A DNA stretch of 64,000 nt from Phallusia mammillata (taxonomy: Eukaryota): assembly GCA_965637545.1 (NCBI GenBank), contig OZ281496.1, forward strand, positions 5,146,001-5,210,000. Reading direction: 5' to 3'. Positions 6,480-43,629 of the stretch are shown in pieces. The position numbers and the translations under genes were made by a program. Numbering within the stretch: the first letter of the stretch is position 1; each line of letters starts with the position of its first letter. The notes under the pieces are model-generated. The model worked only from the letters and a program-made list of their open reading frames with translations, was not told where the DNA came from and searched no databases.

Positions 6480-7799
6480 TGTTCACTTCAACGTAATTAA
6501 ACCATGCTGCACCAAGCAAACCTGCGGTAACACGTTCTGCATTGAGTTTTTGCCTATATTAAAATATTGAACAAGCAAACCACATAATTCCACAATTAGA
6601 TATTACAGACTTTTCGCAAATCTACGTTTACTTTTTGTCCTGCTGCATGAAAAGAAACTATTGCACATACCTTACGTTCTTAAAACGTCTTAGACTGAAA
6701 GTGTCCTCGACCGACCTGAGGTTTAACCACTCTGATTTAAAGTAGATAAAAATCAAAGATTTATAAATTAATGAGTAAAGATGTACATATGGGTAAGACC
6801 ATAGAAATCCAAACCGCAACAAAAAAATCAACGAAAATAATTCTTTGTTTGTTGTTTTGTAAATATGTTGATTCAACAGATTATAGATGTTTACAGTAGG
6901 TTGGTTTGTATCTGAAACTAAATGAAATATTGGATACAATCGATAAACTATGTGGAAGCATTAAGTTGTACAATCAATCGTATACAGTCATCGAAAGAAA
7001 CAATCCCAACTTGCAAACCAAATCCACCACAAATAAGCTTGTTAAGATTATTTCTTCTCTACATCCAAAAACTTTTTTAATACTTAACCGGTAAATGTTT
7101 TGACAATAAAACTTCATTCCGCCTATGACTGCCATTTCTAATCTTTCAGTTCAGTTCTATTAGTTGTTCCCATACATTGTGCAAATTTAGCAATTATTGA
7201 AAAATAGCTAGATTAACTCATAATTAAGTGTTTTGACTATAAAACTTCATTGTGCCTGTGATTGGAATTTCTAAACATTCATTTCAGTTTTATTTAATGG
7301 TTTCCATGAATTGTGTAAATTCAGCAATTCTTTGAAAAAAGCTCGTTTGAAAGAAAGTAAAATTGTGTAACAGGCAAAAAAGTTGAGAACAATCTTTCAA
7401 ACTTCGTAATATTTCCTATCACAATTTAATTAGGAGACACATGCTACTCTGAACTGCAGTTCCATGGTTAACCATGGTTAATTCAAACGTGTCAAGCGCA
7501 AATGTAACTTTGGTGGACATATACACACACACAGTATCAATTGCATCCGATTATAGTGTTCTACAGTCATACAAACAAAAACACTTTGACAAGCCATTTT
7601 TCGGACAACAAAAAAGCAGTAAATATTACATGTACTGTAATGACTAGTTTTAAAACCTCTAGCAAATTTCACAAGCAACGAATTTTAGAATAAATTGCGG
7701 CCTAATTTGTTGTTTCGAAGAAAATTTTAAGCGTCTTTATGTCGTGAGAAACAATTCAATGTTGAGCATTTCTGACATTTCATCCACAGATCAATTTGT

Positions 7800-9661
7800 T
7801 TATATTCTACTGTAGATCTTGGGCATTTTTGCCCATACGAGATAACCGGCTCCGATAATTATAGCAGCCAGAAGAACAAACATCACAAGTTGGAAGATGT
7901 TGTAAGCGGCATCATTTACTTCATCTCTGTCTCCTGGAGTGTCTGCGATAAAAAGAATGTTTAACTTAGATAAACATATATGTGTGCGAAAGCATTTGCT
8001 ACTGGAACTAAAGATTAACACCTCAGACAGACTAAAAATAATGCCACTCTTGCATACACTTGAAAGTGGGCCAAGCTTGCGAGAGATTGAAAGCCAATAC
8101 GAGAAGTAACTCTAAACTTTGATTCCTGCTTAAGGCAATGTATGTTTCTTACACACAAAACAAAACGAAAAAGTGACTTTAGGAGTCAAGCTATGCATAA
8201 GTTTGCCAAGATGGTCGACTGACAAGTGCAACCGACTTGTATTCAATAGTTTGTGGGTTCTAATCCTGTGACGGCAGCTTGCGTTTCCCTGGGCAAGAAA
8301 CTTTGGAATTGCTCTAACCCAGGGAAACCCGACGGATTGCACTACATTAACGTCCCCTCCGCTATAACGTAGTTGCTATAAATCTAGCAGCTCGACCGTG
8401 GACTGACTGTTAGTTAACGCATCCAGGTGTTGCAGGCTCTTTGAGGATTAAAATAAAACAAACAACAAATTCACTTTAAGGCGCAGTAATGTCAGTCATA
8501 CAAACAGGCGAAATCTTTGATAATTGAGGCCTAAAATAGCCCAAAAAAATATATCCCTAAGAGTTTTAATTGGTAAATACAATGATATGAGTAGTTACAA
8601 CATAGGCAACTAAAGTATTTTGTCCTGAACCAAGTTAATCTGCAAGAAAGAAGAGTTTACTTATTGAGTTGGTACCTTGCGTAAGCAAATACTTGGTAGT
8701 TTGCAAGATGTGCACTGGCCCTGCAGAAAGTCGCTGGCTGCGTCCATTGTTGTCAACAGATCGTCTTTTTCTTCCACCACACATCTGCAGATAAGTTTTA
8801 TATTAACATTTTTTATCATTTATTCAGCTGTGAAAATCAAGAAGCTAGAACCTGAAAAACCTTAGACAAATCGTGTTTTTTCCCCGGTGTATTTCCACTA
8901 AAGCAAACCTATTGAAAACTATTTAAGTCAAATATAATCCACCAAACTGTGCAAGCAGTTCGAGAACGGACTTATCGTGAGCTTATCACAACAAACAAAC
9001 ACAATTCACCTGTCCAGGGCATTGTCCAGTTGAGTTTTGACAGATGGTCACATCGCAGTGGATGTAGATAAATTGTTGACATAAATTTACGCAAGGTGAA
9101 ATACAATCAGCCTTTCAACTTTGTTTAAAAGCATGAGCACACACTTCAAATTAAACATAAGTAATGCTTACCCGCTTTGTACAACCGGGTAGTACAACAA
9201 ACCACTGGAGTTTTCAACGCGTGTCGCCCAACATTCTTCAAGCTGTATACAAACTTGTACTAAAGTCAAATGTACAAACTATGTAGCACCCAAATGATGC
9301 TTGAATTTTTAACATGAAAATAACAACTCAGATGTGTTAACAATTTTAAAATCTTCAGTAAAAAAAGGCAATAAACTTGGGTTGAATGAAAGTTATACAG
9401 AAAGTAATGTAACGAGTGTAAGTTGGATTTCCTATAAAATCAGAACTACAATTTATCAACCTTTGTTGCATCAATGCACTTGTTTTTACCTGGACAATGA
9501 AGTCATCGTGGCTTGGAGAAATCTCATTAAGTTTAATTTCAGCGAAACTGTAGGTGGGCACAGTTACTTCCCCAGGCAAGCTTTCGTTGAAATGTTCGTT
9601 GGTAAAAAGATTTAGAGCAACGTCAAAGTTTCCTGTATTCTCTGCTGAAATTTCAACGTAT
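7800..9661 (-). pseudogene. Z1: 5'-truncated CUB-ZP paralogue (exons 9-13 only)
   Basis: Exons 9490-9661, 9172-9242, 9010-9077 (5' part and acceptor deleted), 8676-8784 (MCGGRKRRS), 7800-7942 (TM; 1-nt deletion alters the tail). Homology to Z2 intron 8 stops at ~9852. Confidence 0.85.
8190..8470 (+). mobile_element. tRNA-derived SINE in Z intron 12
   Basis: A-box-like ttgccaagatgg, B-box gggttctaatcc (8255-8266), central ccctgggcaagaaact motif, A-rich tail. Copies at 34335-34655 and truncated at ~27290-27365. Confidence 0.65.
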
Positions 9662-10039
9662 CTGTAACAAAATTCTACGGTTAAGGAATAAATAGATACA
9701 CTTCTGAGGGTACTATTAGTTTTTTAATATTCTTATCTTAAACGTTTATTTTTTTATCGGCTTAATTGATTAGCACTAATAATAAAACCAAAATGCCATA
9801 TGAAACGTTTTGAGAAACATTGCGTCTATTTGCCATATTTGGCATGTGCTTAAAGGCGTCATGCCAAATCAGTCAGTCTCCTACGCATTCCAAAATGTAT
9901 TACGCCTTTAATAGGCCTGGCGCACTATGATTTAGCTAACAAAATATTATACTCTCTGACTTATATAACTTTTCTACCACACGCATGCTATTCAAAACTC
10001 GGTTAATCATAAGTTGTAAAATTTCAATTTGACTTTCAG

Positions 10040-13000: not shown

Positions 13001-13171
13001 AACGCAACCATTTTTTTACCAATTAATGCGTCTTTTTCAGGTTTATTTGCATTTGAAAACTTTGACCCTAATGGACCTCCAGCAGAAGAACCACCTCAAG
13101 TAGACGACGGTGAGGTTCGAAACCCGGACAACCAGTTGCAACCAGAACACAACCAGCCCCATAATAACTGA
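10040..13171 (+). CDS. P2: 5'-truncated duplicate of gene P (frames still open)
   Basis: Exons 10040-10081, 10147-10251, 11934-11963, 12159-12200, (12431-12433), 12645-12686, 12897-12960, 13041-13171 (GLFAFENFDPNGPPAEEPP...HNN*). No equivalents of the P1 5' exons upstream of the 9853 breakpoint. Confidence 0.6.
10989..11769. mobile_element. hAT-type non-autonomous element (MITE)
   Basis: TIRs caggggtgtcaagctcgagg / cctcgagtttgacaggcctg. 8-bp TSD gtacagat / gtatacat. Empty site gtatagat in the P1 paralogue at ~5290. Confidence 0.85.
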
Positions 13172-14675: not shown

Positions 14676-17600
14676 CTACAGACCAATTTGTTTGAACTTG
14701 AGATCTTGGGCAATTTTAGCCCATACAAGGTAGCAAGCACCTATAATTACAGCAGCCAAAAGAACAAACATAAAAAGTTGAAGGATGTTGTCCTCTGCTT
14801 CATTTTCTTCACCTCTGTCTCCTGGAGTGTCTGCGAATAAAAGATAGTTTAGCTTAGATAAACATATGTGTACGCGAGCATTAGCTAGTGAAGCTATAGC
14901 TTAACACTTCATAGAGCCTAAAAACAATACCATTCGCATATGCTTCAAAGTGCGGCAATCTTGCAAGAGTTTGAAACATGAATCCAGCTGATTCTCAACA
15001 CACTTCAGATTAAACAACCAGTTGATGGTGGGATTCTAATTCACACCATAACATTATTTAGACAGGATTAAAACAAACAAATCAATTGACATCAAGGCAC
15101 AGTAATTTTAGTCACAGAAACGGACAAAATGTTTGATGATTGAGGCTTAATATAGCTTAAGTTACATGTTTTAGTGTATAAAAACAATACTTTGAGTAGT
15201 TAAAACATAGGCAACTGCAGTATTTTGTTCTGAACTAAGTTATTATGCAGGAATAAAGAGTTTTTCTTCTGTGTTGGTACCTTGCATAAGCAAATACTTG
15301 GTAGTTTGTAAGATGTGAAGTGGTCCTGCAGAAAGTCGTTGGCTGCGCCCATTGTTGTTAACAGATCGTCTTTTTTTCCCACCACACATCTGCAAATCAG
15401 TTACATATTAATATTTTTTTCATGTATATATGTATGTATTAATAAGGATAAACAAAGCAGCTAAATAGAATCAGAAAAAAAACTTGTATGTAATGTTTTT
15501 TTTCCTGTTTATTTCAACTAAAGCAAACTCATTGGAGAATAAATTAATCGAATATAATCCACTTTACTTGCAATGATGCAAGCAGCTTGACAGCGGACTT
15601 ATTATTAGCCTTACACAACACACAAACTCAACTCACCTGTCCAGGGCATTGTCCAGTCGAGTTTTGACAGATGATCAGATCGCAGTGGATATAGATAAAT
15701 TGTTCTGCATCAGTAAAGTTTGTCCACACAAAGCTCATCAGCTTGAAAGTTGCAAAGTTGGATTCGTAATTTCGTATCAACATTTTTGCGCCGGCAACCT
15801 CACTTCCGCTGGGTGGCGCAACACATCTAATAATATTCACAAAAATTTACATAAAGTCAAGTATAATGTGCCGTTCAATATATTATGAAAAACAAGATCA
15901 CACGCTGCAAATCAAATACAAGTAATGAAGTAAAGCTTACCCGCTTACTACAACAGGGTAGTTTGGCAAACCACTGGAGTTATCAACGCGTGTCGCCCAA
16001 CATTCTTCAAGCTGTATACAAAATGGTAAATAAATCAAATGTAGAAACTCTATAGCACCTAAAAGATGCTTAGTGTAATGCAACAAGTGTAATGTGCATT
16101 TTTTTTATGAAACACGAACTAACATTTAGCAACCTTTGTTACCTTAATGATTTTGTTTTTACCTGGACAATGAGGTCATCGTTGCTTGCTGAAATTTCAT
16201 CAAGTTTCACTTTAGCAAAAATGTAGTTAGGCACAGTAACTTCCCCGGGAAAGCTTTCGTTGAAATATTCGTTGGAAAAGAGATTAAGAGCAACGTCAAA
16301 GTTTCCTGTATTCTCAGCAGAAATTTCAAGTGATCTGTAACAAACTTCTACGTTTAAGAAATAAATGGACACGTTCATGAGGAATTAGTCACATCAATAG
16401 ACGTCATTTACTGTTTTTGACTTCACCGTTTATTTTCCGAGTTGTTTGACTAGCACTAATAATAGAATAAAAATTAATCAACAGACCGTTGGAGTCTCTG
16501 TGCCATGTTTGGCATGTGCTTACACATGCAATGAAATGTGTCATGATTATAGTTTGCATTCTACGTGCTTTGCAGCATGTTACATCTGCCCTTGCATTAC
16601 ATGACAAGTATTATGTATATGTTTTGCATATTGTGCGCTTTGTTGACATGTGACATGTTTGGCACGTGCCGTAGATGTCTTCTTACCCGGCTTGTGATTG
16701 GACGTTGGATGACGAGAGAAGTAGTTCCGAGTCAAACAGACAAGTGACATTGAGCTTGTTTTGAACGTCGCGTTGGATCACTGCTGGGGACGGAGCTAGG
16801 AATCTCCAGATAAGGAAGGACACCGACACCTTTCCGTTCTCATTCTGTTAATAAATAAATAAAAAATATTTTTAGAAGAGTAGCAAAAAAGTTGACAGCA
16901 AGAAAAAGCACCAAAACTTAATCGTAACTTCTGTGGACGAAATGAATATGTGTCGATACATGGTGATGCCTGCCTGTATTTTTACTAAATGACATGTTGG
17001 GTGGAAGTGGCTCGATGAAGAAAACAGACATGAGTTTTACCTGATAGAGGCCTTCGCATTGGTCAATGTCAAACACGAACACCGGGTCTGACCCCGTGAC
17101 CTTGCAGTTATCATTAAGTTGAGAAAGGGGAGTTTCCCTGTCCAATGCGATGTAAAGTGTGTCACCGAGTTCGTAATCTAATGTGTTCTGTTCATCAGCT
17201 GTTACTCTGCGAATGATGGCTTTATTAGTTTACATGAACAACTGAACAATACTGGAAACACGCCATCGCATAATAAACTGACTATTTATCAGTATTTAGT
17301 CAGTTGCGCTGCGTTAAAACGTCATGGAGTGGAAGACCGTGAGGATTCAACTGCTGGACAATTACTGAGCGCGCAGTAGCTTGTAATGAATGTATCGTTC
17401 TATTAAGTGACTTATTGTTCAGGATTTCAAAAATAAACAAAAACATGCATAAAAGCAAAGACAAACTTACGCAATGGTCAAGTCTTTGGTCCTGCACACA
17501 CTCATTGATTGTTCCATTCCTACAAAAAAACTTTTAGTTTGCATGTAAGCTTGTGGCTCTTAACCAATTTAGTTTCGTTACCCATTAGCAGAAACCGGGA

Positions 17601-20600
17601 AGTTTTAACAACGTAAAAAAATTACGGCTTGTCGAAATATGTTAAATGACTACATACTGGAAAATCCATAAGTTTAAATTCCTGAAAAAGACTCGGTTTT
17701 TATTTTTCCAACATATAAACTGTTACAAACTGTCCCTCCTACAAATTACTGCTCAAACTAAGATTTTTCCTGTTGTTGAAATTTGAGTTCTACCTGATTC
17801 ATTGTTGACTGTCGCATTAAATCCCTGTGCTTGACCGCTTGCGTCGCTGACAAAGATTAATGTAAGAATTGTTGCAGTAACTGTATGATTCAACCCCCCA
17901 GTATGATTTCCAGTCAATCTTTCCACATTACCTTCTTCATTCTGGAACTGAAAATAAAATCACCGACCAATGTATAAACCAGTGAACAAGTGTGATGTAT
18001 GTTGTTGTTATAAAAGCTCAAATGTATTTTTTGGTTTGGGTTCAGTTTTTGTTTCGCATCTAAATTCATGCTCAGTCAAATTAATTTCATCGTTTTATAT
18101 TGGCAGATCTAACTTTAAACAAAAATTCTGTCTTGTTTAAAAATCGGGTGATGCCTGGTTTTTTGGTTCTTTAGTGGGATTTAACGAAAATGACAAAACG
18201 ACAATCACTTACGTAAAGAAAGTCGAATCCATCCTCGGTGTTATAAGTGGAGAATTGAAACATCAAGGACGAGCTGCTTTGCAATTGAAATCTCCAAACA
18301 CACCCAGCAAAAGCGGAGTAGTCACCCGGAAACATAGGAGATAACAAATTATACGGCAGGCTGTCAACATCTTCACCACACTCTTCAGCTGAATTGCACA
18401 TAAAGCGTCAATGGTTGATAGTTACGCTGCGGACGGACAGTGCAGATGGTGCACAAAACTTTGGTTTCTAAACAATTGCCAAATTACTTATGCTTTAAGA
18501 TCTACTCCGCGTTATGTAAGCTGGGTTGCCGTTTGGCCAATCTCTTGTCACCAGCTGCACTGAAGAGACGACAAAGGTTAAAACAGAATTAACAAGCTGG
18601 ATCTAAATACACAAAATACATTTTGCAGACTCCAAAATGGTGGGTGGTCAAGTTCATGATCTCATATTTTAGATTAACACATAGTTAAGCTTTTCCGTAT
18701 ACATCCGACTTACCGGGACTTATAAACACTTCTATTTCGACTGTTGTCAGGTTGAGGACACATGATACATAGACAGACGAGCTTTCAACGATAACCGGAA
18801 AAGATAAGCCTCCACCTAACAACGTACCAGCCAATGTGCCCGAATTGTCGATTCCCTCGTATATCTAGATTAAACCTAGATTGTATCTTAGTCAAAAAAC
18901 ATTTACAATTTTAGCAAAAAACATTTAACGCTCTTTTGGTTTGATGTGCTACTTCAATGTAGGTTTTTTCTAGCCTTTTTTGTCCACTTAGATCTTACCT
19001 AATGGCACAATAGTAGGTCAGAGGCAATCACATACATACATTAGCAAACATAGGATATCACAAGTTACTTGTGTGGGTTCCAAAATCAACCAAATTAATG
19101 CCCATGTTCCAAGTTATCCAATGCAAAAGTGCGTAAATAAGCATAAAGTGAAGATGTTAAACATTTGAAAGATTAAAATCACAAATTTAGTAATAGATCA
19201 AAACCATCAACAACATGGCTTAAACTGACGATCACTGTTTGCCTTTTTAACTAGAGTACAGTAAAACCAATGGACGATAAAATCCTTGGTTTAGCATTAC
19301 ACCAGTTGAACGACAAATTTGGTAAAATGCAACCTGGTGGACGAAACACTTGTTCGGTATTTTCTGAGGATCTTAATGCAACTTACAAACAAAACCATTA
19401 CCGACCCAAGTCATAATATACGAAATTCTACCTGACAAAAGTTGTTTGTAGCAAGCTCTCCTGAAGGAAAATAAGCAACCAATCTAGGGAAGTCGTCTCG
19501 GGAAACAAAACTAATAGTCCACGTGTCACATATAGCTGGAATATATTCAGTCAGTCGTGAAGAGATTGCTAGCCCAACATCACACCGTGCATCTGAAACT
19601 TAACATTGCATTTGCCAATAAGACAAAATTGAACCAATCCAAAAAATGTATATTAAGGTTAAACGAAATATGCCCTTTTCGTATTTTTATGGTTAAACGA
19701 ATATGCCCCTTTTCGTACGTTTCGTATTTGTTTACAAATATTTCAACAGTTTTGATACAATTAAACATTTCTACGTTTAAGAACAGATATTGATTAGTTT
19801 TTCTTTTCAATTTTGTTTCCTGGTACCGCAGAGCACTAAAATTTCTAAGATTGAAACAGTATGGGTGCATTGTGCTGTTGTCAAACGAGGATTGTCTTCT
19901 CAATTTCGGGATTTTAGTTAAGAAACGGATTAAATATAGGTAATATTTATTGGGAATGGAACGTTCAATACTAAAAGAAAAAGGAATTTGAATCGAAAAC
20001 GCCGCATAAGACGAGAGTGAAATAAAGAGAAAAGAACCGTTTGAGGGTGAAGGTTCGTGATGTTCTGGGCGAAAAAAATCACCAGGAACGGTGATGGCAC
20101 AACCGTAAACAAGTTCGGCCGATGAAGCCAGCAGGTATTTTTTTGGAGCTGTGCGAATACCAAACTCAACTTAACCTATGGTGGTCCCCTTGCCGACACC
20201 AAATCTTCTATGGTTTCGTTTATGCCCATGAATCTGTCCCTCCGTGTCACTCTCAAGATTGTTCTGAGGCATTTCATTTTAAACTCCAGCAGAGCTGTTA
20301 ACTCCTGTTCTCTGAGAGTTCAAGACTCAGAACCGTATATGGCTATACGGAGGATTAAAGCCTTATATAACCTAAGTTTTAGGGTTCTGGTCATGTCACT
20401 GGAGGTCCAGATAGTGCTCCTTAGACCACCACATGCCTGTGACGCCATGGATATTTTCTGGAGGACGTCAGAGGTACAGTTCGGGATCAAACTTCCGAGG
20501 AACTTGAACAATTTAACTTTTGCAAACTTGACGTTGTACTTGCATATCGTGCCAAACAAAATTTGAAGCGACAAGTTTGCGTGTTCACCGTATAGATGGG

Positions 20601-23129
20601 TGTAATGAAACGTGTATGAGATCAAAAACTTTAAGTTGCCATGATGTTGGGACAATTGGACGAGGCGACTCAAAAGGAAACGTCCCAAATGATTGTAGCT
20701 CTAGATCAGGGGTTCTTAACCAGGGGAGTACGCACCCCAAGGGGTGCAAGAACTGTTCCTAGGGGGTGGCGGGAATGCTGAATCATTAAGGTTGGTTAGG
20801 TCTTTTTTAAACACAAAACCCAGGTGGGTGCTAAAATTGGTTGGTGATTTGAAAGGGGTGCAGCAAGGAAAAAAGGTTTAAGAACCACTGCTCTAGTTTG
20901 ATCGATCTACATGTCATTTAGTTGAGGGTTAGTGACTGAAGTACGGTGTGCTTGAACCTCTGGGCCAACCTGAGCAGCTGCCAGTGACAAATAATCAAAA
21001 TCAGATAGGAATCAAACTGCATCGATGAAAACGCGGGAGAGGGCGTCGGCCAAGTGTTTTTGTTTGCCTTCGATGTGTCGCACATCTGTGGTAAACTCCG
21101 AAATGGCGGTTAAATGACGTTGTTGGTGTGCTGACCACGGAGCCCACACTTCGGTTAATGCAAAGGTCAACGGCTTGTGATGTGTGTACGGTCAACCAAA
21201 AAACCAACTCTAACTGGTCATCCAAAGAACGTTGTAGGTTTACCCATAGGTCTCGTATAAATAGGAGACCTGATGCGTGCAGCGCCAGAAATAAAACGAT
21301 GGCACAAGTTTACGATACCTGCAAATTACTGAAGCCCGTTAGCAGCAGAGGGGTGCGGAAAAGTTTGAAAAGCTTCGACTTTGTTGGGAAGGGGTCGGGC
21401 ACGGGTATTGTCAACTCGATGTCCCGTCAAAGTACCTCCCTGGAAGGTCCTTATGTTTTATGTAATAAGGTCCAAATACCTCCCTGGAGGTCCTCGGTTT
21501 GCGACGGCGTTTACAAGTCCAAATGCCTCCCTTGAAGGTATAAGTTGCGCCAGCGCAGCTACCGCGGAGCAACGGAGAGGAGCAACGGCGCGGCCCGGAG
21601 CAACTGAGCAACTCAAGCGTTGCAAAGGGAAAAAAGGCGTTGAATTCTATGCAACAAAAACCTGGGTATTGCTTTGAGCTGTATCATACGCTTCAAAGTT
21701 ACAAACGGTGACTTTTATGTGCAATATCATTGTTTACTTTTGTTGACTGAACAATAAACTTCATGTTTTTTGTTTGGTGTATTAATGGTCGTAGTTCTCG
21801 GAAAGTGACTTGCTCGCGACGAGCTCCCACCATGACTTAAGCCGAATGACATGCTAAGGAATCCAAAAAGGCCAAAAGGAGTAATGACCGCGGTTTTCGC
21901 AATCTCACCTGGGCCACAGGTACCTGGTGGTAACCACGAAAAGTCTTGAATGTGAGGAATTGGCAGAACGATCAGGCCGGGTAGCTGCGTTAAGACCGGG
22001 TAGCTGCGTTAAGATCGGGTAGCTGCGTAAATCATTGCGGTCACAAAGCCCATGGACTGGAAGAACGTCTAATAATACCCCGTTGCAGCACGTTTTATAT
22101 TCTTTTTTAGCGAAGCCGAGTTTCCCGGGAGGGCGAAATCGAGCGCGAAAGTGCACGAGTGGGCCATTAGCTGGGAAAAATGCTGAAGTCCATGCTTGGG
22201 TTACGTCTGTGAAAAAATGGGAAAAAGTAATTCCTTGCAATTTGGCCGACAACCGAGCATGAGCCGAAGAGCGCGCGGAAACGGTGTTGGTTCGATGCTT
22301 TGTCCAGTGCAACGATGGAGAAGGTGTCGGCATTGATGAGACGTCGATGCTTGAGGTCCTTGCAAAAAATGAGCCCTTGGACAAGCATAAACTGTCATTG
22401 AAGTTTGCCGGAAGGTAAATGCATAGTTAACAGACGTGACCCGGATATGGGTGCCATTCGCAGCAACGAGGTTTTTTTAGGAGGATTGTTGCGGCGCTTC
22501 AATCCTATGGCTGTATTGACGCTTACCTCGGAGTAGCGAGATGTTTATTCGAGGTACATGAAAATAGAATAAGACAAGGTACTAATACGTCGCACAGGAC
22601 GAGAGTGAAACAAAGAAAGCATTCTGTCCGGTTCACTGTAGGTATACAAGAACACGATAATCATAGTGAGAGAAGCCAACACATATGTAGACTTTTTCAG
22701 CTCACTAAAACGAGTCCAAATCGTATTTCTATTTGCTTTTTGCATGCGATAAGTGAAACATGATCAAATAAGGGATTCTCTGCATGAACGAAATGCATAA
22801 GCTGTTAGGGTACGTAAAATAAAATTATACCACACAGCCAAAGTAACCATTTAAATCCGACTGTAGTTTCCACTGTATGTTGTCATACTGTTTATTTGTT
22901 CGCAACTATTTTGCTTCATTGGTCTATGTATACCCGTGTGCAGAAAAACGGCAAAACGTTTGCAAAATAATTAGTTCTTTAACCAAAAACGAGCATTTGG
23001 TGAAACTTTATGCCAGTTAAAGGAGAAACGTTACTAAATTAAAAAAAATATTTACCAAATCAACTTACCTTTGTGCAAAAAACTAATCGAACAGACAAAC
23101 AGAGCCAGTTTCAATAGCCCTTGTGACAT
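14676..23129 (-). CDS. Z2: CUB-like + CUB + ZP-domain type I membrane protein (CUZD1-like architecture), 590 aa, intact
   Basis: 13 phase-compatible exons: 23069-23129 (signal MSQGLLKLALFVCSISFLHK), 19432-19592, 18714-18864, 18213-18388 (CUB: CGEDV..LLSPMFPGDY..CVWRF..TEDGFDFLY), 17794-17947, 17471-17519, 17041-17206, 16687-16844, 16163-16334, 15941-16011 (LEECWATR), 15637-15826 (FIYIHCDLIIC), 15281-15389 (CGGKKRRS..LSAGPLHI), 14676-14830 (TM, stop). No stops or frameshifts seen. Confidence 0.9.
20170..20620 (-). mobile_element. RTE-like LINE reverse-transcriptase C-terminal fragment nested in the gypsy remnant
   Basis: FKFLGSLI...IWTSSDMTRTLKLRLYKALILRIAIYGSES*TL...FKMKCLRTILRV matches the conserved RTE/CR1-type RT C-terminus. 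Absent from the paralogous gypsy copy. Confidence 0.7.
20707..20890. mobile_element. hAT-type MITE (184 bp)
   Basis: TIRs caggggttcttaacc / ggtttaagaaccactg. TSD ctctagat / ctctagtt. Empty site ctccagat at ~48129. Confidence 0.85.
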
Positions 23130-25999: not shown

Positions 26000-26775
26000 G
26001 CTACTTTACTAAGTTGTAATTGGTGGTGTTAAGAGCACAGTTATTTAAATAAGCAGAAGGACTGGGATAGAGTTACGAATTAAATTTAACATGAGAACTA
26101 TGTTTACAGGTTAAATTTATTTTTTATTATAAAACCTCACCCCAACCCTAATCGCCCTAGCCATCAGCGCTTTCATACAATCTACTTTGAATATTTACAA
26201 ATGCTCTTTGCGCCATCTATCGGTATATAGGGCAGATGCACTGAGATTTGTTACAAGACAACTACAGAAAAACATTACAATTCTTTTGTATCTTTAAGTA
26301 TTGGCCGAATTAGGTGAAGATATGTATATTAAACGACTGCGCGTTGGGCGCAGTTTATTGCCCTTAAAGCAAATAAAAAATGTCTTTGCTGTTCATGTAA
26401 AACTAGAGTTACGAAAATCTACACAATTTTCTAAACTTTCTAATGTTCTATCTTGTATTTTAAATAGGATACTTATGTTACCATAAACTTCCTCATTGAA
26501 ACAGAAACCATTTAACTCTTGTAAGGCTCAAAATGAACACACACAGTTTCAATTGCATCCGATTATATTGTTCTACAGTAACAGAAGTCTTTGACAAGGT
26601 ATATTTTTGACAACAACAAAGTAAAAAATGTTGCATGTTCTGTAATAGATAGTTAATGTTGCATGTTCTGTAATAGATAGCTTAAACTGTTAAATGTAAA
26701 AAGGATAAATGTAAAAATTTGTAGTATTTTTAAGCGTTTATAAGTCGACAGAAACAATACAATTTTAAGTTTCGT

Positions 26776-27600
26776 CTACAGACAAATTTGTTTATGTTTT
26801 GGACCTTGGGCATTTTTGCCGCATAAAAGGTAACCAGCTCCGATAAATACAGCAGCCAGAGGAACAAACATCACAAGTTGGAAGATGTCCTCAGCTGCTT
26901 CATTTACTTCATCTCGGTCTCTTGGAGTGTCTGCGATAAAAAAATGTTTAACTTATATATATATGGGTGCGAGAGCATATTTTACTGGAGCTTAGCTCAT
27001 CCAACAGACTAAAAAATACCACTCTTATATATACTTCGATGTAAGCTTGCAAGAGATTTATTATCAATGCATTTCATTGCGACAAGACATAGACTAAAAT
27101 CAGCCGATGGTGGGATTCGAACCCACAAAATAATATTATTTATTATATTAATATTTTTTAAATAAATGTTTTGTATTTTGGTAGAAACTTTAATTTCTAT
27201 TTCCTGGTTAAGGCATAGCCGAGTCTATTTCTTATGAACTGTGTAAGAAAGCGAAACACAAATCCGACTTTAGAAGTCAAGCCAAACAAGTTAATATTTA
27301 ATTTCGTTAAATGTGTTTGGGCGACAGACTTGTATTCGAAAAATCGCGGGTTCTAATCCAGTCTAAACGACAAGTCCCAATAGGTTTGACTTGATCAATA
27401 CCATAATTTGCTTTGTGAAAACACAAGCAACTGCAGTAGTAGTTACTGAAATAAGTTAAAGCGTACGAAAAGATACTTATTGTGTTGTTACCTTGCACAA
27501 GCAAATATTTGCTGGTTTGCAAAATGTGAACTGGTCTTGCAGAAAGTCGTTGGTTGCGTCCATTGTTATCAACAGATCGTCGTCCCACACCTCCACATGT
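26776..27600 (-). pseudogene. Z3: orphan last two exons of a CUB-ZP paralogue
   Basis: Exon 12 at 27492-27600 (TCGGVGRRS..LSARPVHI) and exon 13 at 26776-26930 (TM, stop), both in frame. Upstream homology ends at ~27690, where the TE cluster begins. Confidence 0.8.
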
Positions 27601-27700
27601 CTGCGAATAGGTTAATATTAATGCTTACCTAATAAGAAAAATGTTTATGGTCAAGAAGTTAGCACAAATTTGAAGTTATCGTAACATAAATGCATTCAAA

Positions 27701-32786: not shown

Positions 32787-34334
32787 CCATACCTTGCAAA
32801 TATGCTATTACATTTTGTTCTACCAAATAAAGAAAAATTTTCTAGACTAAAGGTGTTCTCTTAACTCGGTCACTTAATTGGTCCAAAGTGGCGGTCCAAT
32901 TAATGTAAATCAACAATTTAACAATTCAATAAGTAAAGATGTAACAACCGAAGTGACCATAAAAACTAACACGTTGAATTTAAAGTTTAATTAAAGAACT
33001 AAATTCATTTTAAATGTCTCCTTCACAACTATCTACAGGAGCATTTGTCTTTTGAGTATTTGTTTTAAAGATTTTAAATGTTTTCAGTAGGTTGGTTTGA
33101 CTACGAAACTGAACAACTGTTAAAAACAGATACACTAGGTGGAGGCATTGAGTCGCCCATAAATTCGATTTTGACATCGTACTTTGTCATCGTGCAAACC
33201 AAGTTTATTACATCCACTTAAATTTTTACTATTAACCTGTATTAAACAACAATTTTAAATGCTTTTTAACTAACTGTTTTTACAAAAAAAATCTATGTTG
33301 ACTGTGAATGTTTTATCAAGTGTTAATTGTAAATGGTGCAAATTGGAAATTGTTTTTCAAAAAAAGCTCGTTTCGACTTGACAGCTCAACCCTCGCGAGG
33401 AAGTCAAATTATGTAAACAGGAAATTTCTGCTAATTGCCAACAGTCTTCTGGGCTGTTTGAAACTTCCTATCACATTTTATTTAGGTTGCAGATGATACT
33501 CTAAACTGATTTCTTGAACCTAACAATACACGACTGTAAATTCGGTAGTCATATAATCAACACAGCCACAGATGTAATTGCATCCGATTATATTGTTCTA
33601 CAGCCATAAAAGCACAAAACACTTTGACAAGATAATTTCCTGACAACAATTAACATGAAATGTTGCATGTTGTGTAAAAGTTAGTTTTAATGCGCCTGGA
33701 AAATTTACGTCAACGAATTTCAAAATAAAACGCTGAAAAAAATGTTGTTTATAAGACAAATTCAAAACTTTATTGTATTTTATAGGCGTTTTTGTGTCAA
33801 CAAAAAGCCATAAAATGTTGAGTATTTGAGAAATTTCATCTACATGCCAATTTGTTTAGATTTTGGATCTTGGCTAATTTTGACCCACACAAGGTAACCA
33901 GCTCCGATAATTAATTATAATTAGAGCAGCCAGAAGAACAAACATCACAAGTAGGAAGATATTTTGAGCTGCTTCATTTACTTCATCTCTGTCTACTGCA
34001 TTGTCTGTGAATAATAGAATGTTTAACTTAGATATATATGGGTGCGAGAGCATATTTTACTGAAACTTGAACTTAACACATCATACAGACTAAAAATAAT
34101 AACACTCTTATATATACTTTGAAGTACGCCAAGCTTGCAAGAGATTTAAAGCCGACTCCAGACAATTATCAATACACTTGAGATTAAAGAACCTGTTGAT
34201 GGTGGAATTCGAACCCACCGCATACCACCGTTCAGTATTAAGTTTTTCGTTTTTATTGCAACTTTAATTTTGTTTTCTGGTTAAGGCAATGTCGAGTCTG
34301 ATTCTTATATGCAGCTTAAAAAACGAGCAATCAA

Positions 34335-34655
34335 CTTTAGGAGTCAGTGCATGCATAAGTTTGCCAAGATGGTCGAGTTGTAAGCAAAACCGACTTGTGT
34401 ATAATAGCACGTGGGTTCTAATCCTGACTTGGCAGCTTGCGTTTTTTTCTGGGCAAAATACTGAATTGGCATTGATCCAACCCAATAAAACCCGACGGAT
34501 GACACTACATTAACGTCCCCTACGCTAAAAGTCTCAAATAATACATATTCAACTGAGTTGCAACAACTCTGGCAGCTCGACCGTGGACTCACTGTGAGTT
34601 AACGCATTCAGGCGTTGCCGGCCTATCCAGGATTAAATAAAAACAAAAACAAACC
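34335..34655 (+). mobile_element. tRNA-derived SINE (paralogous copy of 8190-8470)
   Basis: Same A/B boxes, ctgggcaaaa core and A-rich tail at the same intron position. Confidence 0.65.
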
Positions 34656-35768
34656 AATTCACTTTAAAGCGCAGTAGTTTCATTCATAAAAAAAGGCGAA
34701 ATCTTTGATAATTGAAGCATAATATAGCTTAAGTAAATAGCATATTTCCCCAAGGGTTTTCGTTGATAAATACAATAATTTGAGTAGTTGAAATATAGGC
34801 AACTAAAGTATTTGGTCCTGAACTAAGTTAATATGTAGGAAAGATGAGTTTGCTTATTGTGTTGTTACCTTGCATAAGCAAATACTTGCTAGTTTGTAAA
34901 ATGTGCACTGGTCCTGCAGAAACTCGTTGATTGCGTCCATTGTTGTCAACAGATCGTCTTTTTTTCCCACCACACATCTGCAAATAAGTTTAATATTAAT
35001 AAATTTTTTCATGAATATAAATATTATTAAGGATAGATCAGGAAGTTAAATGCAATATAAAAAAACTCATGTATCCCGTTTTTTCTCTGTTAATTTCAAC
35101 TAAAGCAAACTTATTGAAGAATAAATAAATTAAACATAATTGCAATGATGCAAGCAGCTCGACGGCGGACATATTCTAAGCCTAGCACAAGAAACAAATT
35201 CAACTCACCTGTCCAGGGCATTGTCCAGTTGAGTTTTGACAGACGGTCACGTCGCAGTGGATGTATAGATAAATTGTTCTGCGTCGGTAAAGTTTGTCCA
35301 CACAAAGCTCATCAGCTTGAACGTTGCAAAGTTGGATTCGTAATTCCGTATCAACATCGAGTCGGCAGACTCGCCTCCACTGGGTGGAGAAACACATCTA
35401 ATAATATTGACTCAAATTAATATGTGCCGTTTAATTTCAGAAAAAACAAGAGCACACAGTACAAATTCAATCAAAGTAAAGCTTACCCGCTTCCTACAAC
35501 CGGGTAGTTCGGCAAACCACTGGAGTTTTCAACGCGTGTCGCCCAACATTCTTCAAGCTGTATACAAAATGGTAAATAAATCAAATGTAGAAACTCTATA
35601 GCACCTAAAAGATGCTTACTGTAATGCAACAAGTGTAATGTGCATTTTTTATGAAACACGAACTAACATTTAGCAACCTTTGTTACCTTAATGCTTTTGT
35701 TTTTACCTGGACAATGAAGTCATCGTTGCTTGCAGAAATTTCATCAAGTTTCACTTCAGCAAAATGTA

Positions 35769-36646
35769 TGTTACATCGCCTTGTACATATGTTTATGTTT
35801 TCTGTGTTTCCCGCCAGTAGTCTTGATTCCTGTGTATGACGCAGTGTTGTGCCACCTGCAACATTGTTTGTCACACTATCGGTGATTGTGATGTCACAAC
35901 TTTGGCATTGTTTATTGGTATCACGTCTTGTAGGCGAGACCGCCTCGTGTTTATTAGTGACTGGAACTTACAGCGTCTGCATGCGTTTTTTAAACTGGTC
36001 AATTATGTTTGTTTTTTGTGTAACGAACAGGAAAATTATGCTGTTTAGAAACTGAATCGTCCAATGTTTGACTTGAATATTTAGTGATCGGTAAGCATAT
36101 GTTAAACCTTGTTGTTAAACTTTTGGATTTGAATTTATGTGAAACCTGTATTCAGACGTGAATTCCGCCGTCGTCCAACCCGTGTTATTCTGAACCGAAC
36201 TGTGTTATTCCGGTAAGATTGTTGTTGCTTAAAGTTTGCCGTCCGTCACTAGTGTGATTAAGTGATGTTTATGTGTGATGTTATTAGATGCTGTGTTTAC
36301 ACCTTCTACTGATCGCTTGAATTTAAACGACTCCAGTCCTCTAATAGTTTGGTAAGCGTAAATGTCATTGAAATTCGACTTTTGTTGCCTTGTCTTAATT
36401 TGAACGTTTTTTTTTTGTAGAAACCGCCTTTTGACCCTTGTACTTGCCGTGCTGTCGTACTCTCGAGCGCCATCTATCGGCCATATTGTAGAATAAAAGA
36501 GTTCGTTATATAGCTCTTGGCGTCTTGGAGTTTGAGCGCAAGGAAAGGCGCGTTAAAGACAGTTTTAGGACACAAGCGATCGCCCCTGCTGTGCTGTCTG
36601 GAGGCGCATGGAGTCACGCCTTCCGATAACAAAAGACAGCGCAACA
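35769..36646 (+). repeat. 5' LTR
   Basis: Differs from the 3' LTR by 3 substitutions and one homopolymer length (by eye). AATAAA at ~36492. Confidence 0.95.
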
Positions 36647-36701
36647 TCGTTTCAAACTTCTGGACACTTGAACACCCACGGCTTGTTGATCGACGTCAAG
36701 C

Positions 36702-38990
36702 TTGGAAAACTTCACAATGGAAACTCATAAAGGCGCCATTCCTGCGCCTGAGTCACATGACTCACTTTCCACTGTCGAAATCACTGACAAGGACAAAATT
36801 TCCAGTTGTTCATACGCTTGGCAACAAGCTTGTTTGCGAATTGAAGAATTAATGCTAAAAACCGAAAATGTCACCCTCGTAAAGGAGTTTGTTCTAGTGA
36901 TTGAAAGAACCTTCAGCGATCTCGTCGCCGCGTATGCCCCTTTTGAGGAAGGTAACGAAGCCATGTCTCAAGCACGACGGGCATGTCAACAGGATAAACG
37001 TGAACTGGATTCCCGTGTACAGGAATGGTTCGTAAACGTCGAGAAATCCATGGGTCGCCACGAAACTCGATCGAGTTACACGTCCAGCTCCCATCTCGGT
37101 TCGGCAAGTACTCGAACGTCCGGTTCGACGGAAAGTTGCCGAAAAGCGGCCAGGGTACGGATGCGCGTAGCTCGCTTGTCGAGCCAGCAACTCGACGAAG
37201 ATGTCGCCTTAGAGACCCAACAAGCTGACATGCAAGCCGCTTTCGCTAAGCAGCAGGCCGCAATCGATGCCAAACGAAGAATAAAAAATAGGGACAATGA
37301 AGTCGCGTTGGCCGAAGCTGAGGTCCTTGCTTGGGACGAGGAGTTGGAGAACGAAGGTAGACCGGTCGTCCACAAACCACAGATTAATGACTTGTCGCCA
37401 CCGGTTGCGTCACTTGGCAATTGTTCCAGGGAGCCCGTGTATTCTCCACCACGGTCATCCGCTGTGGCCCAGACTCCGACAAATCCCGTAAAAATGTCAC
37501 GCCCGCAAATTTCGAAAATGGATATAAAGCCTATACTCGCTCCTGCTGTTGTTCCACCTGTCGAAAGGTCGCGTACCGATTCCGACCCCTATCCTCCATA
37601 CATGAACAAACCGCGTGCTTCTTCCCCGCCTCGATGTGCTCCCGACACCGATTTCGTTCAACAACAAATAGTCCTGCCTCAGCCGGCCATCAAGAAGTTC
37701 GACGGCGACCCGTTGAACTACTGGTCGTTTGTTCGAGCCATTGAGTCGCATGTTCACCGCAGAACAAAATCTGAAGAATCGCGACTGGTTTGCTTGCTCC
37801 AATACTGTGAAGATTCTGTTGCAGACAAGCTCGAAATCTACAGCAAGGATACAGTCTCTGGTTACTCAAAGGCGCGTTCCCGACTGCATTATGATTACGG
37901 TCAACCACATATTGTTGCCAATGCTTGCGAACGCCGGTTAAAGCTTTTTCCGCCCGTTAGACAAGGTCGACCAAAGGAACTTATGGATTTTTCTGACTTG
38001 CTTGAAAAATGCCGTAGTTCTCTGGAAGACATCCAAGAGTTCGCAAGTTTAAACTCACTAGATACGTTGAAGCAACTCATCCGGAAACTTCCATTTCAGT
38101 ATCGAGAGAGATGGGTGGAACACTCTTTCCAGGTGCTTGAGGAAACCGGGAGACAAGCTGGATACCTTGTGTTTACAAGTTTCGTTGTGCGGTGCGCCCG
38201 TGTGGCCAATTCACTGTTTGGGTCCGAAGCGGTCTACGAAGTCGTGCGCGAAAAAACGCCAATCGAGCCAAAACGGAGTTCAAGAGCCGCTACGTGCAAC
38301 GTCTCATCATCAAAGTTTAATAGGGCACGTTCTGACACACCACCTGTTCCCGCTCCGTGTTGTGTCTGTTGTAAACTGTCACATGATTTGTCAACGTGCC
38401 CGGACTTCGACAAAATGACCTTACAAAAACGTCGCGAGGTTGTAACCTCTAATGGCCTTTGTTTCAAATGTCTCTGTTCAGGGCATCGTTGCGGGAATTG
38501 TCCCTGTCGAGAATCGTGCTCCGTTGAAGGTTGCATTAGCACCTTTCATCATACGAAGCTGCATGGTGCATTTCAAAGGAAACAGGTCGTCGGAAATGCT
38601 GAGAACCCTGTCATGGAAACGACTACCCAAACGGTTTCTAGTATGAAGGCGTCCACCAATAACTGCGGAGTCTACCTCAACGTCGTGCCGGTGACGGTCA
38701 GACATAACGGTATCGAGGTAAATACGTATGCCTTCATTGATCAAGGGTCTACTTCAACATTTTGCGAACAACGACTAATTGACAAACTCGGCCTACAGTG
38801 TAAGGGTCGAAAAATATGCTTAAGCACGCTTACCGATCAATCTAGAGTGTATCAAGGTTCCACGATCTCTTTCACTGTTACTCCGCTTGGTGGAGGAAAG
38901 CCTCTGGTCCTTAACGAAGTTCTGTCTATTGATAAAATTCCTGTATCGCCAAATTGCTTCCCTACGCCAAATGTTCTTCACAAATATTAA
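36702..38990 (+). CDS. gag: BEL/Pao Gag + aspartic protease
   Basis: IKKFDGDPLNYWSF motif. Three Cys/His knuckles (CVCCKLSHDLSTC, CFKCLCSGHRCGNC, CSVEGCISTFHHTKLH). Protease motif YAFIDQGSTSTF. Confidence 0.92.
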   Translation: MENFTMETHKGAIPAPESHDSLSTVEITDKDKISSCSYAWQQACLRIEELMLKTENVTLVKEFVLVIERTFSDLVAAYAPFEEGNEAMSQARRACQQDKRELDSRVQEWFVNVEKSMGRHETRSSYTSSSHLGSASTRTSGSTESCRKAARVRMRVARLSSQQLDEDVALETQQADMQAAFAKQQAAIDAKRRIKNRDNEVALAEAEVLAWDEELENEGRPVVHKPQINDLSPPVASLGNCSREPVYSPPRSSAVAQTPTNPVKMSRPQISKMDIKPILAPAVVPPVERSRTDSDPYPPYMNKPRASSPPRCAPDTDFVQQQIVLPQPAIKKFDGDPLNYWSFVRAIESHVHRRTKSEESRLVCLLQYCEDSVADKLEIYSKDTVSGYSKARSRLHYDYGQPHIVANACERRLKLFPPVRQGRPKELMDFSDLLEKCRSSLEDIQEFASLNSLDTLKQLIRKLPFQYRERWVEHSFQVLEETGRQAGYLVFTSFVVRCARVANSLFGSEAVYEVVREKTPIEPKRSSRAATCNVSSSKFNRARSDTPPVPAPCCVCCKLSHDLSTCPDFDKMTLQKRREVVTSNGLCFKCLCSGHRCGNCPCRESCSVEGCISTFHHTKLHGAFQRKQVVGNAENPVMETTTQTVSSMKASTNNCGVYLNVVPVTVRHNGIEVNTYAFIDQGSTSTFCEQRLIDKLGLQCKGRKICLSTLTDQSRVYQGSTISFTVTPLGGGKPLVLNEVLSIDKIPVSPNCFPTPNVLHKY

Positions 38991-42601: not shown

Positions 42602-42752
42602 ATGGAAGACGAATTGAGTTTTCACAACAGAAACTGTTCGACAAGAAATCATCGCCTCATTGCGATGCACGCGCGATTGGCGATGTTGTTTTTGAAAAAA
42701 TGTGTCACGTTGCTTGCAGAAATTTCATCAAGTTTCACTTCAGCAAAATGTA

Positions 42753-43629
42753 TGTTACATCGCCTTGTACATATGTTTATGTTTTCTGTGTTTCCCGCCA
42801 GTAGTCTTGATTCCTGTGTATGACGCAGTGTTGTGCCACCTGCAACATTGTTTGTCACACTATCGGTGATTGTGATGTCACAACTTTGGCATTGTTTATT
42901 GGTATCACGTCTTGTAGGCGAGACCGCCTCGTGTTTATTAGTGACTGGAACTTACAGCGTCTGCATGCGTTTTTTAAACTGGTCAATTATGTTTGTTTTT
43001 TGTGTAACGAACAGGAAAATTATGCTGTTTAGAAACTGAATCGTCCAATGTTTGACTTGAATATTTAGTGATCGGTAAGCATATGTTAAACCTTGTTGTT
43101 AAACTTTTGGATTTGAATTTATGTGAAACCTGTATTCAGACGTGAATTCCGCCGTCGTCCAACCCGTGTTATTCTGAACCGAACTGTGTTATTCCGGTAA
43201 GATTATTGTTGCTTAAAGTTTGCCGTCCGTCACTAGTGTGATTAAGTGATGTTTATGTGTGATGTTATTAGATGCTGTGTTTACACCTTCTACTGATCGC
43301 TTGAATTTAAACGACTCCAGTCCTCTAATAGTTTGGTAAGCGTAAATGTCATTGAAATTCGACTTTTGTTGCCTTGTCTTAATTTGAACGTTTTTTTTTG
43401 TAGAAACCGCCTTTTGACCCTTGTACTTGCCGTGCTGCCGTATTCTCGAGCGCCATCTATCGGCCATATTGTAGAATAAAAGAGTTCGTTATATAGCTCT
43501 TGGCGTCTTGGAGTTTGAGCGCAAGGAAAGGCGCGTTAAAGACAGTTTTAGGACACAAGCGATCGCCCCTGCTGTGCTGTCTGGAGGCGCATGGAGTCAC
43601 GCCTTCCGATAACAAAAGACAGCGCAACA
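42753..43629 (+). repeat. 3' LTR
   Basis: Near-identical to the 5' LTR. Preceded by host-derived sequence rather than a polypurine tract. Confidence 0.95.

What the first reader, a model, noticed from the sequence alone, without database searches (positions are those of the whole stretch)
19432..19592. Hypervariable exon 2 of the CUB-ZP paralogues: signature of diversifying selection
Z2 vs Z4 exon 2 (53 codons) differ at 28 codons by amino-acid replacement and at only 2 silently. The next exon (50 codons, same domain) shows 6 replacement and 6 silent; ZP exon 7 (55 codons) shows 8 and 4. Z5 exon 2 is a third, very different variant on the same C...RL...W...RL.AY..SG.LA..N.C frame. These are hand counts from the sequence. 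The exon encodes the membrane-distal N-terminus. In other systems this pattern marks gamete-recognition, allorecognition or pathogen-binding surfaces (e.g. ZP-domain egg-coat proteins); applying that here is inference.
Basis: partly seen in the sequence, partly recalled or inferred. Interest (0 to 1): 0.78.

Follow-up and report, generated by a model that had tools for sequence, protein, structure and literature searches.

The report
Fast-evolving head exon, CUB-ZP gene array
The flagged stretch is a real, transcribed exon encoding the outermost tip of a CUZD1-like (CUB-CUB-ZP-membrane anchor) surface protein; the tip changes its amino acids about as fast as neutral DNA while the rest of the gene is conserved, but proof of adaptive "diversifying" selection is only partial.

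Summary
The "2 silent" understates silent change. Nei-Gojobori gives 7 silent and 30 replacement substitutions, dN/dS 1.45 (p=0.26), and 0.78 and 0.72 against Z5. By maximum likelihood, exon 2 has omega 1.05, which is not above 1 but is above the rest of the gene (0.44, p=0.002).

Z4 is a pseudogene: a BEL/Pao retrotransposon sits in a ZP exon and there are two frameshifts. Z2 is intact and transcribed. Spliced RNA contigs from three studies join exon 2 to exon 3, and the exon starts at 19598, not 19592.

Partial support for selection:
- On the Z2 lineage, all 13 assignable exon-2 changes are replacements (p about 0.005-0.013).
- A site class with omega about 3.5 fits the CUB exons (p=0.003), densest in exon 2, and is absent from the ZP-anchor part.
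- Exon 2 alone is not significant.

Silent and intron divergence match the flanks, so distant gene conversion is excluded. Four runs show no allelic hypervariability. Earlier scan notes describe the same pattern at other loci of this genome. This is a new member of a known kind.

The parts
19432..19598 (-). Exon 2 of Z2. It encodes the first ~55 residues of the mature protein, the N-terminal half of the membrane-distal CUB-like domain.
   Evidence: AG acceptor at 19600-19599 and GT donor at 19431-19430. RNA contigs cover 19432-19601 with 0 differences and are spliced to exon 3.
23069..23129 (-). Exon 1 of Z2: start codon plus signal peptide (20 codons plus 1 base), donor GTAAGT.
   Evidence: Homologous exons sit upstream of Z4 (51175-51235) and Z5 (60841-60901). 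Its end...AAAG, explains why the RNA contig matches as far as 19601.
18714..18864 (-). Exon 3 of Z2: C-terminal half of the CUB-like domain 1, conserved.
   Evidence: hhalign against the CUB repeats of P0003 gives probability 92.7%, E 4e-7. The 18864->19432 junction is seen in RNA. Omega is 0.26-0.67.
17794..18388 (-). Exons 4 (18213-18388) and 5 (17794-17947) of Z2: the second CUB domain.
   Evidence: Pfam CUB scores 27.9 bits against a cut-off of 21.4 on exon 4 alone. Junctions are seen in RNA.
14676..17519 (-). Z2 exons 6-13: 17471-17519, 17041-17206, 16687-16844, 16163-16334, 15941-16011, 15637-15826, 15281-15389, 14676-14830. They encode the ZP module, a basic cleavage site (KKRRS), the membrane anchor and the stop codon.
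   Evidence: All splice sites are GT-AG and the ORF is intact. Pfam ZP-C scores 26.8 bits against a cut-off of 24.6. Every junction is seen in RNA-like contigs and none in DNA contigs.
46881..47047 (-). Exon 2 of Z4, the pseudogene copy. The second cysteine is replaced by Tyr.
60157..60323 (-). Exon 2 of Z5. The ORF is intact through to the stop. The proximal AG is lost but the upstream AG is kept.
35769..43629 (+). BEL/Pao LTR retrotransposon inserted in a ZP-C exon of Z4. LTRs are 35769-36646 and 42753-43629. The 5-bp target duplication is ATGTA. Both long ORFs are open.
   Evidence: Self-BLAST of the repeats gives 99.5% identity. The exon is split. Pfam finds Peptidase_A17, RVT_1, integrase, DUF1759 and DUF5641.
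33840..35758 (-). 3' half of pseudogene Z4, with a 2-bp insertion in the ZP-C exon and a 10-bp insertion in the anchor exon.
7475..9709 (-). Z1: a 3' gene fragment (ZP-C to anchor exons only).
26537..27622 (-). Z3: a 3' gene fragment (last two exons only).

Best explanation
The interval is exon 2 of an intact, transcribed gene (Z2). The protein has a signal peptide, a divergent CUB-like domain, a canonical CUB domain, a ZP polymerisation module, a basic cleavage site and a membrane anchor. This is the architecture of vertebrate CUZD1.

Z2 belongs to a tandem array:
- Z2 is intact and expressed.
- Z5 has an intact ORF.
- Z4 is a pseudogene.
- Z1 and Z3 are 3' fragments.

Exon 2 encodes the tip of the mature protein, the N-terminal half of the distal CUB-like domain.

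Since the duplications, about a third of exon-2 positions have been held fixed as a scaffold: cysteines, RL, TW, RL.AY, SG.LA, N.C. The positions between them have been replaced at or above the neutral rate. The ZP-anchor stalk has been under ordinary purifying selection.

The most likely cause is a mixture. One part is relaxed constraint on a surface-exposed head, plus plain decay in pseudogene Z4. The other part is episodic positive selection on the head of the functional copy. The result is paralogues with different binding tips on a common polymerising stalk.

Shown here: the gene model, transcription, the rate contrast, and the absence of gene conversion in exon 2. Inferred: that the excess of replacements is adaptive and that the tip binds a ligand.
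For: Gene model: all splice sites are GT-AG and the ORF is intact. Every junction is confirmed by spliced contigs in three studies and is absent from DNA contigs.

Domains: Pfam CUB and ZP-C. Exon 3 matches the C-terminal half of CUB repeats (hhalign 92.7%).

Rate contrast:
- Exon-2 omega is 1.05 against 0.44 for the rest (LRT p=0.0024).
- The ZP exons have omega 0.23-0.48.

No difference in age between exon 2 and its surroundings: exon-2 dS is 0.21, the rest of the gene 0.25, and introns K 0.21-0.27.

Z2 lineage:
- 13 replacement and 0 silent changes in exon 2, against 31:34 in the rest of the gene (Fisher p=0.0003).
- Branch LRT against omega=1 gives p=0.013.
- Neutral simulation gives P=0.004-0.006.

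Site classes:
- CUB exons, M2a vs M1a LRT 11.9, p=0.0026, with 23% of sites at omega 3.5.
- 19 of 53 exon-2 codons have posterior above 0.5, against 8/50, 12/59 and 7/51 in the other CUB exons.
- The ZP-anchor part gives LRT 0.5, p=0.77.

Within exon 2 there are more invariant and more three-way-different columns than a single-rate neutral model gives (joint P=0.001).

Read depth in a DNA run, counting contigs at least 90% alike: ZP-C exon about 20x, ZP-N about 9x, exon 3 about 7x, the exon-2 bin 1x. The family is therefore large and shares its stalk but not this exon.
Against: - Exon-wide omega is not above 1 in any pair or in the one-ratio model.
- Exon 2 alone fails M1a vs M2a (p=0.16), and CUB domain 1 alone is borderline (p=0.063).
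- Only three sequences were available, and one is a pseudogene.
- The codon models are my own implementation. They ignore multi-nucleotide mutations and recombination, both of which inflate such tests.
- The Z2-branch result rests on 13 changes and is one of three branches tested.
- No allelic variation is seen in exon 2 in four runs (0, 0, 1 differences, and 2 in 653 nt).
- The N-terminal half of exon 2 has no detectable match to CUB or to any solved structure. Neither the fold nor surface exposure of the variable residues is shown.
Confidence: 0.55

Rival explanations
1. Pure relaxed constraint. The tip exon tolerates almost any residue between a few scaffold positions and drifts neutrally. 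Nothing adaptive is involved, and part of the Z2-Z4 signal is simply pseudogene decay.
For: - Exon-wide omega is 1.05, indistinguishable from 1.
- Exon-2 dN (0.30) is about equal to intron K (0.21-0.27).
- The Z4 branch has 12N:5S and the Z5 branch 26N:13S, both near neutral.
- Z4 is a pseudogene that has lost a scaffold cysteine.
- Exon 2 alone fails the site test.
Against: - The Z2 lineage, which is the intact and expressed gene, has 13N:0S, P=0.004-0.013 under neutrality.
- The site class with omega 3.5 is significant over the CUB exons.
- Invariant and triple-different columns are over-dispersed (joint P=0.001).
Confidence: 0.33
2. Mosaic history. Exon 2 looks divergent because it was converted from a distant paralogue, or because the other exons were homogenised by gene conversion.
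For: - In comparisons with Z5, silent divergence is lower in the ZP exons (0.18-0.31) than in the CUB exons (0.45-0.80).
- In the ZP-C exon, Z4 is closer to Z5 than to Z2. This hints at some conversion in the stalk.
- An earlier scan note on another locus reports patchy conversion (s1-380845, unchecked).
Against: - For Z2-Z4, exon-2 dS (0.21), whole-gene dS (0.25) and flanking-intron K (0.21-0.27) agree.
- The nucleotide identity of exon 2 (77-78%) equals that of its flanking introns.
- The exon-2 tree ((Z2,Z4),Z5) is the tree of the 27-kb segmental duplication.
Confidence: 0.04
3. An allelic recognition locus: exon 2 is hypervariable between individuals, as in self-incompatibility or allorecognition genes.
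For: - The variable tip sits on a ZP protein.
- Polymorphic ZP proteins are reported in Ciona oocytes and follicle cells (Kurn et al. 2007, as cited in PMC8849226).
- Overall polymorphism at the locus is high. The best DNA runs hold only about 0.5-0.57 of the 31-mers.
Against: - Exon 2 shows 0, 0 and 1 differences in RNA contigs of three studies, and 2 differences in 653 nt in a DNA run.
- The DNA contig depth there equals the single-copy baseline.
- The variation seen is between paralogues, not between alleles.
Confidence: 0.05

Closest known systems
[quoted passage not shown]
   Same: - Same order of parts: signal peptide, two CUB-type domains, ZP module, membrane anchor.
- Similar size: about 592 aa here against 607 aa in human (PMC3654630).
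   Different: - This is a tandemly expanded family, at least 3 copies in this window and roughly 10-20 by read depth. CUZD1 is reported as highly conserved among species (PMC3654630).
- The first domain is so divergent that Pfam does not call it CUB.
- Orthology was not tested.
DMBT1 / GP2 / uromodulin: secreted or anchored ZP-module proteins that bind microbes
   Same: A binding head (CUB, SRCR or others) is carried on a polymerising ZP stalk that is released at a basic cleavage site. Known family biology; PMC3654630, PMC7887276.
   Different: No SRCR or EGF domains here. No binding data and no tissue information.
Egg-coat ZP proteins with fast-evolving N-terminal recognition regions (abalone VERL, mammalian ZP2; ascidian HrVC70/120, CiVC57, polymorphic Ciona ZP proteins)
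   Same: The N-terminal region ahead of a conserved ZP module carries the variation (PMC8849226, PMC9265791).
   Different: - In the ascidian egg-coat proteins named in those reviews (HrVC70/120, CiVC57), the region ahead of the ZP module is EGF-repeat or vWF-based, not CUB.
- The variation here is between paralogues, not shown between alleles or species.
- Expression in the oocyte or follicle is unknown.

Membership tests
CUZD1-like (CUB-CUB-ZP-anchor) proteins | N-terminal signal peptide | tested here: met
   Exon 1 has a hydrophobic core and is conserved upstream of all three full copies, with a GTAAG donor. The RNA contig runs 74 nt beyond exon 2. No signal-peptide predictor was run.
CUZD1-like (CUB-CUB-ZP-anchor) proteins | Second CUB domain | tested here: met
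   Pfam PF00431 scores 27.9 bits (cut-off 21.4) on exon 4 alone. Exon 5 matches the end of the profile, positions 68-109.
CUZD1-like (CUB-CUB-ZP-anchor) proteins | First CUB domain (exons 2+3) | tested here: inconclusive
   - The C-terminal half matches CUB repeats (hhalign 92.7%, E 4e-7).
- The intron splits the domain at the same place and in the same phases as in CUB2.
- The exon-2 half has no hit in Pfam, PDB, the ESM Atlas or against CUB2.
- The fold was not predicted, because the spliced sequence has no reference.
CUZD1-like (CUB-CUB-ZP-anchor) proteins | ZP module (ZP-N + ZP-C) | tested here: met
   Pfam ZP-C scores 26.8 bits (cut-off 24.6) on one exon. The ZP-N exons gave no Pfam hit when scanned singly.
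CUZD1-like (CUB-CUB-ZP-anchor) proteins | Basic cleavage site followed by a C-terminal membrane anchor | tested here: met
   KKRRS in exon 12, and a run of about 20 hydrophobic residues before a short basic tail in exon 13, read directly from the translation.
CUZD1-like (CUB-CUB-ZP-anchor) proteins | Orthology to vertebrate CUZD1 by phylogeny | not tested
   No full-length reference could be handed to the search tools. The representative library held no family member.
Genes under diversifying (positive) selection | dN/dS significantly above 1 over the region claimed | tested here: not met
   Pairwise 1.45 (p=0.26), 0.78 and 0.72. ML omega 1.05, p=0.88 against 1.
Genes under diversifying (positive) selection | A site class with omega>1 by likelihood-ratio test | tested here: inconclusive
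   CUB exons p=0.0026 and whole gene p=0.0008. Exon 2 alone p=0.16 and CUB1 p=0.063. Three sequences, own code.
Genes under diversifying (positive) selection | Lineage-specific excess of replacements in a functional copy | tested here: met
   Z2 branch 13N:0S. LRT p=0.013, neutral simulation P=0.004-0.006. Not corrected for three branches.
Allelic recognition loci (self-incompatibility / allorecognition) | Many divergent alleles of the variable segment in the population | tested here: not met
   0-1 differences in exon 2 in contigs of four runs from four studies. The sample is small and contigs drop rare variants.
Egg-coat ZP recognition proteins | Expression in oocyte or follicle cells, and presence in the egg coat | not testable with these tools
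   Run identities are coded. Transcripts are present in three studies and absent from two others.

The most novel reading that the evidence does not exclude
The CUB-ZP genes of this genome (roughly 10-20 copies by read depth) form a germline-encoded repertoire. Exon 2 would be the specificity-determining segment of a variable CUB-like head mounted on a constant polymerising ZP stalk. That would make it a recognition system for microbes, gametes or non-self, diversified by positive selection after each duplication.
Probability: 0.22. Interest if true: 0.65.

Novelty: new member of a known kind. Interest (0 to 1): 0.38.

Why it matters
If the excess of replacements is adaptive, this family is a candidate recognition repertoire in a close invertebrate relative of vertebrates. 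It would also hint at what the poorly understood vertebrate CUZD1 head binds. As it stands, it is a clean, transcribed example of domain-specific rate contrast in a tandem array. It also shows that counting only silent-only codons overstates dN/dS, and that a comparison partner can be a pseudogene.

Tried and rejected
- **Library search.** The exhaustive HMMER search with exon 3 returned three hits and no family member. Two were unrelated repeat proteins and the third a multi-CUB protein. More paralogues could therefore not be fetched.
- **Fold or family of exon 2.** Profiles of exon 2 and exon 3 against PDB sequences found nothing. The ESM Atlas feature search of exon 2 gave no usable hit. 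hhalign of domain 1 against CUB2 found no match.
- **Structure prediction of the exon 2+3 domain.** Left out.
- **Word search (search for homologous proteins).** Not used. Single exons only reach proteins of 30-110 aa.
- **Start codons just upstream of exon 2 (19870, 19760).** Rejected as exon 1. They have no signal peptide, are not conserved in Z4, and are in the wrong phase.
- **The proximal AG at 19594-19593 as acceptor.** Rejected in favour of 19600-19599.
- **Gene conversion as the cause of exon-2 divergence.** Rejected.
- **Organism identity.** I did not test it.

Full report
**What is at the coordinates**

The interval lies on the minus strand. A GT donor follows 19432 and AG acceptors lie upstream. 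tblastn finds exactly three copies in the window, at 19.6, 47.0 and 60.3 kb, 44-50% identical as protein.

**Array structure**

Self-comparison of the window shows a tandem array on the minus strand:
- Z2 (14.7-23.1 kb), Z4 (33.8-51.2 kb) and Z5 (54.5-60.9 kb) are full-length copies.
- Z1 (7.5-9.7 kb) and Z3 (26.5-27.6 kb) are 3' fragments.
- Z2 and Z4 belong to a roughly 27-kb segmental duplication.

**Gene model**

I built a 13-exon model for Z2 with GT-AG at every intron and an uninterrupted reading frame. Pfam calls CUB on exon 4 (27.9 bits) and the end of CUB on exon 5. It calls ZP-C on exon 11 (26.8 bits). The translation shows a KKRRS site and a hydrophobic anchor.

Exon 1, a 20-codon signal peptide with a GTAAGT donor, lies at 23129-23069. 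It has homologues upstream of Z4 and Z5. [quoted passage not shown]

The first domain (exons 2+3) is only half recognisable:
- Its C-terminal half aligns to CUB repeats (hhalign 92.7%, E 4e-7).
- Its intron sits at the same place and in the same phases as in CUB2.
- The exon-2 half matches nothing in Pfam, PDB or the ESM Atlas, and does not match CUB2.

**Transcription**

Contigs from three RNA-like runs, each from a different study, skip every intron of the model. This includes 18864->19432, the exon 3-exon 2 junction. The DNA run shows none of these joints.

One 883-nt contig carries exons 5-4-3-2 with 0-2 differences. Exon 2 has 0 differences, and the contig continues 74 nt upstream. The contigs match the genome up to 19600/19601. 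Because exon 1 ends in ...AAAG, the acceptor used is the AG at 19600-19599. This explains why Z5 is not broken although its proximal AG is GG.

**Status of the copies**

Z4 is a pseudogene:
- A 7.9-kb BEL/Pao LTR retrotransposon sits inside a ZP-C exon. It has 878/877-bp LTRs, an ATGTA target duplication, open gag-like and pol ORFs, and Pfam Peptidase_A17, RVT_1 and integrase.
- There is a 2-bp and a 10-bp insertion in later exons, and a GC donor.
- The second scaffold cysteine of exon 2 is Tyr.

Z5 has an intact ORF and canonical sites.

**The counts**

The codon alignment has no indels in exons 2-5. Counting only silent-only codons hides silent changes inside replaced codons.

| Measure | Exon 2 | Rest of gene |
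|---|---|---|
| Z2-Z4 Nei-Gojobori Sd / Nd | 7.0 / 30.0 | - |
| Z2-Z4 dS / dN | 0.21 / 0.30 | - |
| Z2-Z4 omega | 1.45 (Fisher p=0.26) | 0.33 |
| Z2-Z5 omega | 0.78 | 0.34 |
| Z4-Z5 omega | 0.72 | 0.40 |

**Likelihood tests**

These use my own GY94/F3x4 code on the three-taxon tree.
- Exon 2 has omega 1.05. This is not different from 1 (p=0.88) but is different from the rest of the gene (0.44, p=0.0024).
- Introns diverge by K=0.21-0.27 between Z2 and Z4. That equals exon-2 dS and is slightly below exon-2 dN.

The exon therefore has the same age as its surroundings, which excludes conversion from a distant copy. Its protein sequence changes at about the neutral rate.

**Evidence beyond neutrality**

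Branch assignment against Z5:

| Branch | Exon 2 (N:S) | Rest of gene (N:S) |
|---|---|---|
| Z2 | 13:0 | 31:34 |
| Z4 | 12:5 | 44:27 |
| Z5 | 26:13 | 114:77 |

- For the Z2 branch, exon 2 against the rest gives Fisher p=0.0003.
- The branch LRT for Z2 against omega=1 gives p=0.013.
- Simulation under neutrality gives P(0 silent and at least 13 replacements)=0.004-0.006.

Site classes, M2a vs M1a:

| Region | LRT | p | Note |
|---|---|---|---|
| Whole gene | 14.3 | 0.0008 | - |
| Four CUB exons | 11.9 | 0.0026 | 23% of sites at omega 3.5 |
| ZP-anchor part | 0.5 | 0.77 | no omega>1 class |
| CUB2 alone | - | 0.041 | - |
| CUB1 alone | - | 0.063 | - |
| Exon 2 alone | - | 0.16 | - |

Exon 2 holds 19 of the 46 codons with posterior above 0.5. 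Within exon 2, 18 invariant and 17 three-way-different columns occur together more often than a single-rate neutral model gives (joint P=0.001). This shows a constrained scaffold plus a fast class.

**Family and population context**

In a DNA run, contig depth at 90% likeness or more is as follows:

| Region | Depth relative to single copy |
|---|---|
| ZP-C exon | about 20x |
| ZP-N exon | about 9x |
| Exon 3 | about 7x |
| Exon 4 | about 3.5x |
| Exon-2 and exon-5 bins | 1x |

Many paralogues therefore share the stalk, but none shares this exon 2. Exon 2 itself shows 0, 0 and 1 differences in the three RNA runs, and 2 differences in 653 nt in the DNA run. There is no sign of allelic hypervariability. 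Transcripts are present in three studies and essentially absent from two others. Tissues are not known.

Earlier notes of this scan describe the same pattern at other loci of the same genome (s1-380845, s1-364020, s1-375440). I used them as leads only.

**Limits**

- Only three sequences were available, one of them a pseudogene.
- The codon-model code is my own and does not model multi-nucleotide mutation or recombination.
- The branch result rests on small counts.
- The representative protein library held no family member, so the sample could not be enlarged.
- The distal domain could not be folded, because a spliced sequence has no reference.

**Verdict**

Exon-wide dN/dS above 1 is not shown. 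Adaptive diversification of the CUB heads, densest in exon 2 and clearest on the functional Z2 lineage, is the best-supported reading but is not proven. Pure relaxation remains a serious rival.

Noticed in passing
window 35769-43629 (+), especially 42708-42752: The BEL/Pao element in Z4 has both long ORFs open and near-identical LTRs. In addition, 45 bp of the host exon that flanks the left LTR is repeated exactly just inside the element, upstream of the right LTR, where the polypurine tract should be. This looks like an LTR-to-LTR conversion tract that ran into the flank. If so, LTR identity (99.5%) may not date the insertion.
   Followed up: partly
window 19125-19430 (intron 2 of Z2); also 18401-18581: Read depth in the DNA run jumps to 6,000-15,000 against a baseline of about 180. 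Many loose ends and an opposite-strand joint occur at 19289/19327. These are high-copy short repeats (MITE/SINE-like) sitting in the introns next to the variable exon.
   Followed up: no
window 20000-22500 and 48100-50800: Intron 1 of Z2 and of Z4 holds decayed retroelement ORFs (reverse-transcriptase and integrase-like fragments, GC 46%). They predate the Z2/Z4 duplication. Z5 lacks them, and its intron 1 is only about 0.5 kb.
   Followed up: no
window 17794-17947 (exon 5 of Z2): The second half of CUB2 is also single-copy at 90% likeness or more in the DNA run. It carries a small cluster of high-omega codons (the ASGQAQ stretch). The variability is therefore not confined to exon 2.
   Followed up: partly
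window 15637-15826 vs 35209-35397 vs 55564-55753 (ZP-C exon): In this exon Z4 is closer to Z5 (dS 0.18) than to Z2 (0.29). That is the opposite of the tree for the rest of the locus and is a hint of gene conversion within the stalk.
   Followed up: no
window 3760-9709 vs 9852-16382: A roughly 6-kb tandem duplication carries the 3' gene fragment Z1 and its downstream region directly behind Z2.
   Followed up: no
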